Shown: positions 42,942-43,470 of the stretch, in pieces
How the letters are laid out: every line of letters starts with the position of its first letter
Numbering within the stretch: the stretch's first letter is position 1
From: Octopus vulgaris
Taxonomy: Eukaryota
NCBI GenBank assembly: GCA_951406725.2
Contig: OX597823.1
Span: forward strand, 114,762,001-114,826,000
DNA length: 64,000 nucleotides
Reading direction: 5' to 3'
Made by a program: the position numbers and the translations under genes
Notes under the pieces: generated by a model
What the model was told of the DNA's origin: nothing
The model's input: only the letters and a program-made list of their open reading frames with translations
The model's database searches: none

Positions 42942-42946
<5 letters not shown>

Positions 42947-43466
42947 AAAGTCAAATGCGATACAATAAAATTAATTATTATCGCTGGTGTTCTAGGACAC
43001 GCCATATATTATTCATATATAAGTACATTAAAAGGCGAAGTGTGTACTAGATACACAAAAGCTGGATAAATTTAATGAGATGAAAATTAAAAACTTTTAC
43101 AAACTTAGTTCTTCTTAGACTGCAGTTTCGCCTATTTCAGCAATAAAAATAATATTTATTTACTCAGGTAGGCTCTTCAGTAAGATTCCTGTTATTATGG
43201 GAAGCGCACATCAATAGAGGCACATGCGTCTATTAAATTGCGCTTTCTAAACTATTCAAATCACTGCGCAGACTCAGAACGTACCCGACAAAATAGGGTT
43301 TTCTGGTATATCGTCTAACGCTCAAAAATTAATCGAGAAAATACGTAAACAAAGTCAAATGCGATACAATAAAATTAATTATTATCGCTGGTGTTCTAGG
43401 ACACGCCATATATTATTCATATATAAGTACATTAAAAGGCATATATAAGTACATTAAAAGTACATT

Positions 43467-43470
<4 letters not shown>
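42942..43470 (-). mobile_element. Hammerhead-bearing 404-bp unit with 95-bp terminal redundancy (retrozyme-like or Penelope pLTR-like), inserted in (TA)n
   Basis: 42942-43036 and 43346-43440 are identical 95-mers; (TA)n lies on both flanks; short re-duplications of the repeat end at 43441-43470. Confidence 0.8.
43113..43185 (-). ncRNA. Type I hammerhead ribozyme
   Basis: Minus strand reads UCUUA-CUGAAGA-GCCUA-(34 nt)-UAGGC-GAAA-CUGCAG-UC-UAAGA. Canonical CUGANGA and GAAA boxes, 5-bp helix I, 5-bp helix II, palindromic ACUGCAGU helix III, and a GUC cleavage triplet (cut between 43118 and 43117). Confidence 0.85.

What the first reader, a model, noticed from the sequence alone, without database searches (positions are those of the whole stretch)
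42942..43470. Canonical type I hammerhead ribozyme in a 404-bp terminally redundant non-coding unit: candidate cephalopod retrozyme
Seen: the minus strand of 43113-43185 folds as a complete hammerhead (helix I UCUUA/UAAGA, CUGAAGA, helix II GCCUA/UAGGC with an AU-rich extension, GAAA, palindromic ACUGCAGU helix III, GUC site). It sits between two identical 95-bp direct repeats with a 404-bp period, about 1.24 units in all. The unit is embedded in (TA)n, carries stuttered copies of the repeat end at the 5' junction, and has no ORF. Known: type I hammerheads with short palindromic helix III occur in Penelope pseudo-LTRs and in small non-coding animal retrozymes that make circular RNAs of a few hundred nt. 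Inference: this is a recent insertion (repeats are identical) copied by reverse transcription running more than once round a 404-nt circular RNA, or a non-autonomous Penelope pLTR unit. With one ribozyme only, this locus alone could not release a monomer. I do not recall a described octopus family of this kind but cannot check.
Basis: partly seen in the sequence, partly recalled or inferred. Interest (0 to 1): 0.82.

Follow-up and report, generated by a model that had tools for sequence, protein, structure and literature searches.

The report
Hammerhead ribozyme in a small retroelement
A genuine self-cutting RNA motif (type I hammerhead) sits in a 404-bp non-coding unit inserted, about one and a quarter units long, into a TA microsatellite; this is what a copy of an animal 'retrozyme' (a non-autonomous relative of Penelope-like retroelements) should look like, so it is a sound but fairly ordinary new example of a known kind.

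Summary
The minus strand of 43185-43113 carries a complete type I hammerhead: every core nucleotide, helices I, II and III, and a GUC cleavage site between 43118 and 43117. Rfam Hammerhead_1 gives 30.6 bits (local E 1.8e-5), just under its gathering score of 34 because helix II carries a 32-nt insertion. It lies in a 404-bp, 33% GC, ORF-less unit present as 1.23 copies (a perfect 94-nt repeat), followed by a 30-nt stutter. The whole 528-bp block interrupts a perfect (TA)n array. Helix III pairs only 2 bp within one molecule. Its 8-nt palindrome can pair fully only between two ribozymes, as in known dimer-type animal hammerheads. The best reading is a 5'-truncated, longer-than-unit cDNA of a short hammerhead-bearing non-coding RNA. 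It was probably inserted by target-primed reverse transcription into AT-rich DNA, most likely by a Penelope-like element. That makes it a non-LTR retrozyme copy, and with one ribozyme a dead-end copy. No other copy could be reached, because no animal genome database was at hand. Family status, circular RNA and the 'cephalopod' host therefore remain untested. Verdict: new member of a known kind, modest interest.

The parts
42915..42943 (.). Perfect (TA)14.5 microsatellite: the target DNA on the 3' side of the element in ribozyme orientation. On the + strand its 3' end abuts the first cDNA base.
   Evidence: TRF: period 2, 14.5 copies, 100% matches; sequence.
42943..43036 (-). Terminal 94 nt of the complete unit (unit positions 311-404, ending ...GCATTTGACTTTGTTT-3' in element sense). 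This is the downstream copy of the direct repeat. It contains a GCGATA...TATCGC hairpin just before the 3' end.
   Evidence: 100% identical to 43347-43440; fold of the 3' terminal 118 nt.
42943..43346 (-). One complete 404-nt unit: non-coding, 33% GC.
   Evidence: Period 404; GC and fold; no ORF.
43113..43185 (-). Type I hammerhead ribozyme (unit positions 162-234). Helix I is UCUUA/UAAGA. The core is CUGAAGA. Helix II is GCCUA/UAGGC plus an AU-rich extension, 44 nt in all. Then come GAAA, helix III (AC/GU plus a UGCA loop; the 8-nt palindrome ACUGCAGU) and the GUC site.
   Evidence: Rfam RF00163, 30.6 bits, E 1.8e-5, full model; descriptor scan 1 observed versus 0.01 expected; folds.
43117..43118 (-). 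Predicted self-cleavage site: after C17 (43118) and before U1.1 (43117). It lies inside the insertion and is continuous there, 175 nt upstream of the insertion's 3' end.
   Evidence: Position read from the sequence; distance computed.
43202..43245 (-). Imperfect 44-nt inverted repeat (hairpin) just upstream of the ribozyme within the unit.
   Evidence: Self-match on the opposite strand, 77% over 44 nt; forms a 17-bp hairpin in the unit's MFE fold.
43347..43440 (-). Upstream, 5'-truncated partial unit (unit positions 311-404 only). It forms the pseudo-LTR-like direct repeat and stops 76 nt short of including a second ribozyme.
43441..43470 (-). A 30-nt stutter at the element's 5' junction: re-copies of the adjacent 19 nt (43441-43459) and 11 nt (43460-43470), ending in the (TA)n.
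   Evidence: Repeat family D5; TRF periods 22 and 11; sequence.
43470..43511 (.). Perfect (TA)21 microsatellite: the target DNA on the 5' side of the element.
   Evidence: TRF: period 2, 21 copies, 100% matches.

Best explanation
The 528-bp block at 42943-43470 (element sense is the minus strand) is one retrotransposed copy of a short, non-coding, hammerhead-bearing RNA with a 404-nt period. That makes it an animal non-LTR retrozyme, which is the same thing as a non-autonomous Penelope-like element.

Proposed steps (inferred unless marked otherwise):
1. An endonuclease nicked a (TA)n microsatellite.
2. The + strand 3'-OH primed cDNA synthesis at a fixed internal site of the RNA (...GACUUUGUUU), next to a hairpin and 175 nt downstream of the ribozyme cut site.
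3. The reverse transcriptase copied one full unit, running straight across the intact cleavage site, and then a further 94 nt of the preceding unit.
4. It then slipped back twice (19 and 11 nt), and the cDNA end was joined to the other side of the (TA)n through TATATA microhomology.

The template was therefore longer than one unit. It was either an uncleaved multimeric transcript of a tandem master locus or a re-ligated 404-nt circle; this locus cannot say which.

The ribozyme is of the dimer-dependent kind, with a 2-bp helix III and a palindrome that pairs between two copies. In tandem transcripts it would cut out monomers that a host ligase can circularise. This copy has a single ribozyme, so it can be cut once at most and cannot release a monomer. 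It is a dead-end daughter copy.

Shown: the motif, the period, the repeat, the junctions, the target and the lack of coding capacity. Inferred: the mobilising enzyme, the template form and the ribozyme's activity.
For: - The hammerhead is complete and significant, and it is on one strand only. No other ribozyme family matches either strand of 42800-43600.
- The unit is 404 nt, 33% GC and ORF-less. This lies inside the published range for metazoan retrozymes: 150-450 bp and under 45% GC (PMC7229834). Mussel retrozymes are 300-400 nt.
- Helix III has 2 bp plus a palindromic tetraloop, the published signature of canonical metazoan type I hammerheads that work as dimers (PMC4209133; axolotl HHR_Amex2).
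- The predicted dimer forms the 8-bp intermolecular helix III at -37.5 kcal/mol, against 2 x -15.4 for two monomers. The monomeric catalytic fold (-9.5) loses to an inactive alternative.
- The copy is a partial tandem (a pseudo-LTR-like 94-nt repeat) whose outer edges coincide exactly with an interruption of a perfect (TA)n array.
- Partial tandems and a (TA)n or AT-rich target bias are Penelope-like element hallmarks (PMC8557442; PMC11167929).
- A purified Penelope-like RT nicks AT-rich DNA, starts internally on multi-copy RNA about 85-92 nt downstream of its hammerhead cut site, and does not need ribozyme cleavage. The geometry here is comparable, at 175 nt.
- The 404-nt period rules out a several-kb ORF-bearing element as the direct template.
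- Retrozymes have been argued to be non-autonomous Penelope derivatives (preprint 10.64898/2026.07.22.740005).
Against: - Only one copy is known. There is no second copy in the 64-kb window and none in any collection I could search, so a repeat family is assumed, not shown.
- The defining retrozyme arrangement, two or more ribozymes in tandem, is not met at this locus.
- The Rfam score is below the curated gathering score (30.6 against 34).
- No Penelope RT/GIY-YIG ORF was seen among the larger open frames of the window, and similarity to an autonomous element's ends could not be tested.
- No target-site duplication can be read in a microsatellite.
- The unit's folding stability is only modestly above shuffles (z -2.1 to -3.5).
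- No activity or expression data exist.
Confidence: 0.62

Rival explanations
1. Same element class, but the template was specifically a 404-nt circular RNA copied by rolling-circle reverse transcription.
For: The cDNA runs uninterrupted across the ribozyme cleavage site and exceeds one unit. That is what a re-ligated circle would give. Retrozyme circles of 170-400 nt are abundant in other invertebrates (PMC7229834), and rolling-circle transposition is the mechanism proposed for them (preprint abstract).
Against: An uncleaved multimeric linear transcript gives an identical product. In vitro, a Penelope-like RT prefers unprocessed RNA and does not need ribozyme cleavage. A dimer-type ribozyme is expected to cleave poorly. 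There are no RNA data.
Confidence: 0.25
2. A local DNA-level partial duplication (replication slippage or unequal exchange) in microsatellite-rich DNA. The duplicated sequence would be single-copy or a relic that happens to carry a hammerhead, with no retrotransposition involved.
For: The window is saturated with tandem repeats. The 19- and 11-nt stutters next to the (TA)n look like slippage. No other copy was found.
Against: The whole block is bounded on both sides by one perfect (TA)n array, as an insertion would be. A complete hammerhead arising by chance is unlikely (0.01 per window). The size, GC content and ribozyme type match a known mobile class.
Confidence: 0.1
3. A decayed edge or remnant of a hammerhead-bearing tandem satellite, like newt satellite 2 or trematode and cricket repeats, reduced to 1.23 units.
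For: Type I hammerheads with weak helix III were first found in such satellites. The unit size is similar, about 330 bp in newts.
Against: The two repeat copies are identical, and the ends abut a clean microsatellite rather than degenerate repeat units. In current usage these satellites are themselves regarded as retrozymes, so this is hardly a separate class.
Confidence: 0.08
4. Mobilised not by a Penelope-like element but by a microsatellite-targeting LINE, acting on it as on a SINE. Dong/R4-type LINEs are abundant in coleoids, if the host is one.
For: Retrozyme authors leave LINEs open as mobilisers. Dong-R4 LINEs are listed among abundant cephalopod repeats. That some LINEs home to microsatellites is from my own knowledge and was not tested here.
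Against: Partial-tandem insertions are characteristic of Penelope-like elements. The element has no poly(A) or simple-repeat tail of its own. The host is unverified.
Confidence: 0.08
5. The hammerhead is a chance match in AT-rich sequence.
For: The score is below Rfam's gathering score.
Against: The whole model is matched with every invariant core base, and E is 1.8e-5 locally. One site is observed against 0.01 expected. The loss of score comes from an insertion in a loop that tolerates it.
Confidence: 0.02

Closest known systems
Metazoan non-LTR retrozymes (Cervera & de la Pena 2020, PMC7229834): coral, mussel and axolotl families
   Same: Type I hammerhead; non-coding unit of 150-450 bp (mussel 300-400 nt); GC under 45%; no LTR, PBS or PPT; copies longer than one unit; helix III of 2 bp plus a tetraloop, as in invertebrate ribozymes and axolotl HHR_Amex2.
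   Different: Here there are only 1.23 units and one ribozyme, whereas the family is defined on dimers to large multimers. Helix II is 44 nt long instead of about 4 bp plus a loop, so the usual loop 1-loop 2 contacts cannot be recognised. Expression and circularity are unknown, and no family has been demonstrated.
Penelope-like elements: pLTR hammerheads and insertion signature (PMC4209133, PMC8557442, PMC11167929)
   Same: Partial-tandem (pseudo-LTR) structure; insertion into AT-rich or (TA)n DNA; hammerhead on the sense strand with a palindromic helix III; the 3' end of the insertion lies downstream of the ribozyme cut site, consistent with internal RT initiation.
   Different: There is no RT/GIY-YIG ORF. 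The ribozyme is a canonical type I, not the 'minimal' PLE variant (no unpaired base between positions 9 and 10.1, and helix III is present). The PLE 'tail' cannot be assessed from one copy. Naiads, the clade with a documented (TA)n preference and reported in Octopus spp., lack canonical hammerheads.
Newt satellite 2 / amphibian dimer-type hammerheads
   Same: A weak helix III with a palindromic loop, so that two ribozymes must pair to cleave efficiently.
   Different: The amphibian type has a 1-bp helix III and conserved loop-loop contacts, and occurs in very large tandem arrays.
Plant LTR retrozymes (PMC4918200)
   Same: A non-autonomous, non-coding retroelement with a hammerhead that is thought to pass through a circular RNA.
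   Different: Plant elements carry type III ribozymes, one in each of two ~350-bp LTRs, plus a PBS and PPT, over 55% GC, 600-1000 nt circles and Gypsy mobilisation. None of these applies here.

Membership tests
Hammerhead ribozyme, type I (Rfam RF00163) | Invariant catalytic core (C3 U4 G5 A6 N7 G8 A9, G12 A13 A14, A15.1-U16.1, H17) with the G10.1-C11.1 pair | tested here: met
   CUGAAGA / G...C / GAAA / A...U / C are all present.
Hammerhead ribozyme, type I (Rfam RF00163) | Three helices with helix I open (type I topology) | tested here: met
   Helix I 5 bp (open), helix II 5 bp plus an extension (closed), helix III 2 bp plus a UGCA loop (closed).
Hammerhead ribozyme, type I (Rfam RF00163) | Score at or above Rfam's curated gathering score (34 bits) | tested here: not met
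   30.6 bits; no hit in gathering mode. The shortfall is explained by a 32-nt insertion in loop 2. E 1.8e-5 in the local scan.
Hammerhead ribozyme, type I (Rfam RF00163) | Site-specific self-cleavage | not testable with these tools
   Needs in vitro transcription of monomer and dimer constructs. Energy models predict that the monomeric active fold is disfavoured and the dimer is favoured.
Metazoan non-LTR retrozyme | Short (150-450 bp), low-GC (under 45%), non-coding unit carrying a type I hammerhead | tested here: met
   404 bp, 33% GC, longest stop-free frame 65-67 aa.
Metazoan non-LTR retrozyme | Tandem arrangement with at least two ribozymes (dimer to multimer), so that a monomer can be excised | tested here: not met
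   1.23 units with one ribozyme. The upstream partial unit stops 76 nt short of a second ribozyme. This applies to this locus only; the family's other loci are unknown.
Metazoan non-LTR retrozyme | Absence of LTR-retroelement features (ribozyme-bearing LTRs, PBS, PPT) | tested here: met
   The ribozyme lies outside the repeated 94 nt. The sequence after the upstream repeat starts ACGTATTTTC (no TGG-type PBS). The only purine run of 8 or more is inside the ribozyme.
Metazoan non-LTR retrozyme | Multi-copy dispersed family in the genome | not testable with these tools
   No animal genome collection was available. There is no second copy in the window, and five searches elsewhere were empty.
Metazoan non-LTR retrozyme | Expression as linear and circular RNA of unit length | not testable with these tools
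   Needs RNA-seq junction reads, a northern blot or RNase R treatment.
Penelope-like element (non-autonomous derivative) | Partial-tandem insertion forming pseudo-LTRs | tested here: met
   A 5'-truncated upstream unit plus a complete unit, with a 94-nt perfect repeat. Defined in PMC8557442 and PMC11167929.
Penelope-like element (non-autonomous derivative) | AT-rich or (TA)n target preference | tested here: met
   The block splits a perfect (TA)n array, 14.5 + 21 units. This is one locus only, so a preference is not shown.
Penelope-like element (non-autonomous derivative) | Optional 30-40 bp 'tail' between two alternative RT start sites | tested here: inconclusive
   The definition needs several copies. 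The 30-nt extra segment here is a stutter at the 5' end, not a 3' extension.
Penelope-like element (non-autonomous derivative) | Sequence similarity of the unit's ends to an autonomous RT/GIY-YIG element of the same genome | not testable with these tools
   No PLE ORF was found among the larger open frames of the window, and no genome or repeat library was at hand.
Plant-type LTR retrozyme | Type III hammerhead in each of two LTRs, plus PBS and PPT | tested here: not met
   A single type I ribozyme outside the repeats, with no PBS or PPT.

The most novel reading that the evidence does not exclude
This is a young copy of an undescribed, currently active retrozyme family of a cephalopod (if the host is one). 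Its 404-nt RNA would circularise and be copied by a (TA)n-targeting Penelope-like element. Naiads are the clade with that documented target preference in Octopus spp., and they themselves lack hammerheads. The locus would then be evidence that hammerhead RNAs parasitise ribozyme-less Penelope-like elements. It would also be a single-locus snapshot of the insertion chemistry: internal RT start, read-through of the cleavage site, and stuttered 5' joining.
Probability: 0.25. Interest if true: 0.5.

Novelty: new member of a known kind. Interest (0 to 1): 0.3.

Why it matters
If the family is confirmed, it would add a molluscan lineage other than bivalves, possibly cephalopods, to the animals with hammerhead retrozymes. 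Hammerhead_1 loci have so far only been counted in a cephalopod (235 in the giant squid genome, PMC6962438) without being described as elements.

The locus is also a clean example of how such elements integrate:
- it splits a perfect (TA)n array;
- its 3' end lies at a fixed internal site 175 nt past the ribozyme cut;
- the cDNA is longer than one unit and crosses the uncut or re-ligated site;
- its 5' end is slipped.

This fits the recent proposal that animal retrozymes are non-autonomous Penelope-like elements, and the in vitro finding that Penelope RT starts internally on unprocessed RNA. It opens no new question and is not surprising to a specialist.

Tried and rejected
1. Rfam at gathering thresholds over the whole window gave nothing. 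The whole-window E-value mode was swamped by more than 250 spurious miRNA-family hits on microsatellites. The local scan was the informative one.
2. My first regex hammerhead scan missed even the true site because of lazy matching. It was rewritten.
3. A second hammerhead-like site at 4678-4792 (+) has a 1-bp helix III and weak stems, and it fails the stricter descriptor. I rejected it as chance.
4. Searches for other copies all came back empty:
   - the exact ribozyme-arm pattern in metagenome and viral contigs;
   - a 24-mer of the terminal repeat in metagenome contigs;
   - the 65-aa antisense frame used as a protein handle in the word-indexed search and in the exhaustive phmmer search of 1.84 billion representatives;
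   - BLAST of the unit against two fetched loci.
5. Host identification failed:
   - the exact-ORF look-up found nothing;
   - the Tc1 remnant's named relatives are from a mantis shrimp, and the rest are unnamed;
   - the ENA records carry no taxon;
   - the Gag-like fragment gave no hits.
6. Plant-type LTR retrozyme: rejected (type I ribozyme, outside the repeats, no PBS or PPT).
7. Viroid-like or deltavirus-like replicon: rejected. There is a ribozyme in one polarity only, the sequence is integrated in DNA, and the fold is only mildly stable.
8. Pol III transcript: unlikely, because the sense strand has nine T4-5 runs, one of them inside helix II.
9. Fragment of an ORF-bearing Penelope element: disfavoured, because the repeat period is 404 nt.

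Full report
WHAT IS THERE. I read 42600-43800 and the minus strand of 43080-43220. The minus strand of 43185-43113 reads UCUUA-CUGAAGA-GCCUA...UAGGC-GAAA-CUGCAG-UC-UAAGA. Every invariant hammerhead position is present: C3-A9, the G10.1-C11.1 pair, G12-A14, A15.1-U16.1 and C17.

Rfam's Hammerhead_1 model (RF00163) aligns over its whole length (1-45/45) at 43186-43112 on the minus strand. It scores 30.6 bits with E = 1.8e-5 for an 801-nt scan against all 4227 families. In gathering mode nothing is reported, because the curated cut-off is 34 bits. The alignment shows that the shortfall comes from a 32-nt insertion in loop 2 and two single-base deletions, not from any core mismatch.

An independent descriptor (CUGANGA, helix II >=4 bp, GAAA, helix III >=2 bp, UH, helix I >=5 bp) finds exactly one site on both strands of the 64 kb. 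The expectation is 0.01 per window shuffled in 200-nt blocks. No other ribozyme family matches either strand of 42800-43600.

THE UNIT. 42943-43036 and 43347-43440 are identical over 94 nt with a 404-nt spacing. The block therefore holds 498 nt, or 1.23 units, followed on the + strand by 43441-43459 and 43460-43470. These re-copy the preceding 19 and 11 nt.

The 528-bp block is bracketed by perfect (TA)14.5 at 42915-42943 and perfect (TA)21 at 43470-43511. The unit is 33% GC. Its longest stop-free frame is 65-67 aa, antisense to the ribozyme. BLAST of the unit against the window finds only itself, the partial copy and an internal 44-nt inverted repeat at 43202-43245.

In the ribozyme's orientation the layout is: 5' (TA)n, 30-nt stutter, unit positions 311-404, unit positions 1-404, (TA)n 3'. 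The ribozyme occupies unit positions 162-234, and the cut falls after position 229, 175 nt before the 3' end. The upstream partial unit ends 76 nt short of a second ribozyme.

THE RIBOZYME'S TYPE. Helix III can pair only A-U and C-G around a UGCA tetraloop within one molecule. The 8-nt palindrome ACUGCAGU can pair fully only between two ribozymes.
- With ViennaRNA, the enforced monomeric catalytic fold is -9.5 kcal/mol, against -15.4 for an inactive alternative in which CUG of the core pairs with CAG of helix III.
- Two copies fold to -37.5 kcal/mol with the 8-bp intermolecular helix III.

[quoted passage not shown] It also fits the axolotl HHR_Amex2 type, described as 'similar to invertebrate HHRs' (PMC7229834).

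It is not the 'minimal' Penelope variant, because it has a helix III and no unpaired base between positions 9 and 10.1. Its 44-nt helix II is unusual, so the usual loop 1-loop 2 contacts cannot be recognised.

HOW IT MOST LIKELY AROSE. The + strand of the window is the cDNA strand. It runs from the 3' end of a (TA)n tract straight into AAACAAAGTC..., continues through a whole unit, crosses the ribozyme cleavage site without interruption, and enters a second pass for 94 nt. It then stutters twice and ends in (TA)n.

Three things follow directly from this layout.
- The template was longer than one unit.
- The template was not a linear monomer released by the ribozyme.
- The insertion's ends are unrelated to the cleavage site.

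The layout matches what is published for Penelope-like elements.
- They form partial tandems (pseudo-LTRs) and show a microsatellite, especially (TA)n, insertion bias (PMC8557442).
- For a purified Poseidon element, the enzyme nicks AT-rich DNA and starts reverse transcription at an internal site of a multi-copy, unprocessed RNA. That site lies next to a stem-loop, 111-118 nt into the ORF, which is about 85-92 nt past the hammerhead cut site. Ribozyme cleavage was not required (PMC11167929).

Here the 3' end lies 175 nt past the cut site and just after a GCGATA...TATCGC hairpin.

Metazoan retrozymes are defined as short (150-450 bp), low-GC tandem repeats with type I hammerheads that lack LTR, PBS and PPT. 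Their authors name Penelope-like elements as the likely mobilisers. A 2026 preprint argues from co-occurrence and pLTR similarity that they are non-autonomous Penelope derivatives.

I therefore read the locus as a 5'-truncated dimer cDNA of such an element. Whether the template was a circle (rolling-circle copying) or an uncleaved multimer cannot be decided from one locus. Because this copy has one ribozyme of the dimer-dependent kind, it should be cut poorly, once at most, and cannot yield a monomer.

WHAT COULD NOT BE SHOWN. No animal genome collection was available. The searches for other copies were all empty:
- the ribozyme-arm pattern in metagenome and viral contigs;
- a 24-mer of the terminal repeat in metagenome contigs;
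- the 65-aa antisense frame as a protein handle, in the word-indexed search and the exhaustive search;
- two fetched loci.

Copy number, master arrays, a shared 3' end and similarity to an autonomous element are therefore untested.

The host also remains unverified.
- The window has Tc1/mariner remnants. Their nearest named relatives are from the mantis shrimp Oratosquilla oratoria at 54-75% identity, and the best hits (80%) are unnamed ENA contigs.
- A Gag-like fragment gave nothing, and an exact-ORF look-up failed.

'Cephalopod' is neither confirmed nor contradicted. If the host is a cephalopod, three published points apply. Penelope elements are abundant in coleoids (PMC8967140). Naiads occur in Octopus spp. 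and favour (TA)n but lack hammerheads. The giant squid genome paper counted 235 Hammerhead_1 loci without describing them (PMC6962438). My literature searches found no described cephalopod retrozyme.

'Recent' is only loosely bounded, since 0 differences in 94 nt allows up to 3.1% divergence at 95% confidence.

RIVALS.
- A DNA-level partial duplication in this very repeat-rich window cannot be excluded without other copies. It does not, however, explain why the block's two outer edges split one perfect microsatellite, or why it carries a complete ribozyme of the retrozyme type.
- A satellite remnant is not really a different class.
- A microsatellite-homing LINE as mobiliser is possible, but it does not explain the partial tandem as well.
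- A chance motif is rejected on the statistics above.
- Plant-type LTR retrozyme, viroid-like replicon and Pol III transcript were considered and rejected.

VERDICT. This is a new member of a known kind and of modest interest.

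Noticed in passing
window 16072-16473 (+) and 16634-17041 (+): Remnants of a Tc1/mariner transposase (Pfam HTH_Tnp_Tc3_2, 4.9e-14; DDE_3, 1.1e-11), split between two frames. 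Related DNA occurs at 73-83% identity in two unnamed ENA contigs. The nearest named protein relatives are from the mantis shrimp Oratosquilla oratoria.
   Followed up: partly
window 44730-45098 (+): A stop-free 123-aa frame with a Gag-like CCHC zinc-knuckle pattern lies 1.3 kb from the ribozyme unit. It has no Pfam hit at 0.01 and no database relative, so it is probably a decayed retroelement fragment unrelated to the unit.
   Followed up: partly
window 2315-2671 (+), 28642-29097 (+), 49543-49863 (+): Three stretches translate to a shared motif (RRNGPVVRAADLRSEDRGFDSQ-like). This suggests several copies of one interspersed repeat, possibly a tRNA-derived SINE. It was not analysed at the DNA level.
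   Followed up: no
whole window, e.g. 25800-26100, 31200-31430, 34570-34960, 53930-54300: Dense (TA)n, (CA)n and (CATA/TATG)n microsatellites produce more than 250 sub-threshold hits to miRNA families (mir-297, mir-3149, mir-1277, mir-466) in Rfam E-value mode. All are far below gathering scores and are artefacts of simple repeats.
   Followed up: yes
window 4678-4792 (+): A loose hammerhead-like pattern (CUGAAGA...GAAA...) with a 1-bp helix III and weak stems. It fails the stricter descriptor and has no Rfam support, so it is a chance match.
   Followed up: yes
window 40539-41247 and 51949-52659: Long low-complexity tracts (trinucleotide-type repeats that read as poly-I/M/N/L/S in every frame) generate the longest 'ORFs' of the window. 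They are not genes.
   Followed up: no
window 43202-43245 (-): Within the unit, just upstream of the ribozyme, a 44-nt imperfect inverted repeat folds into a hairpin of about 17 bp. Its role, if any, is unknown; it could be a protein-binding or promoter element.
   Followed up: partly
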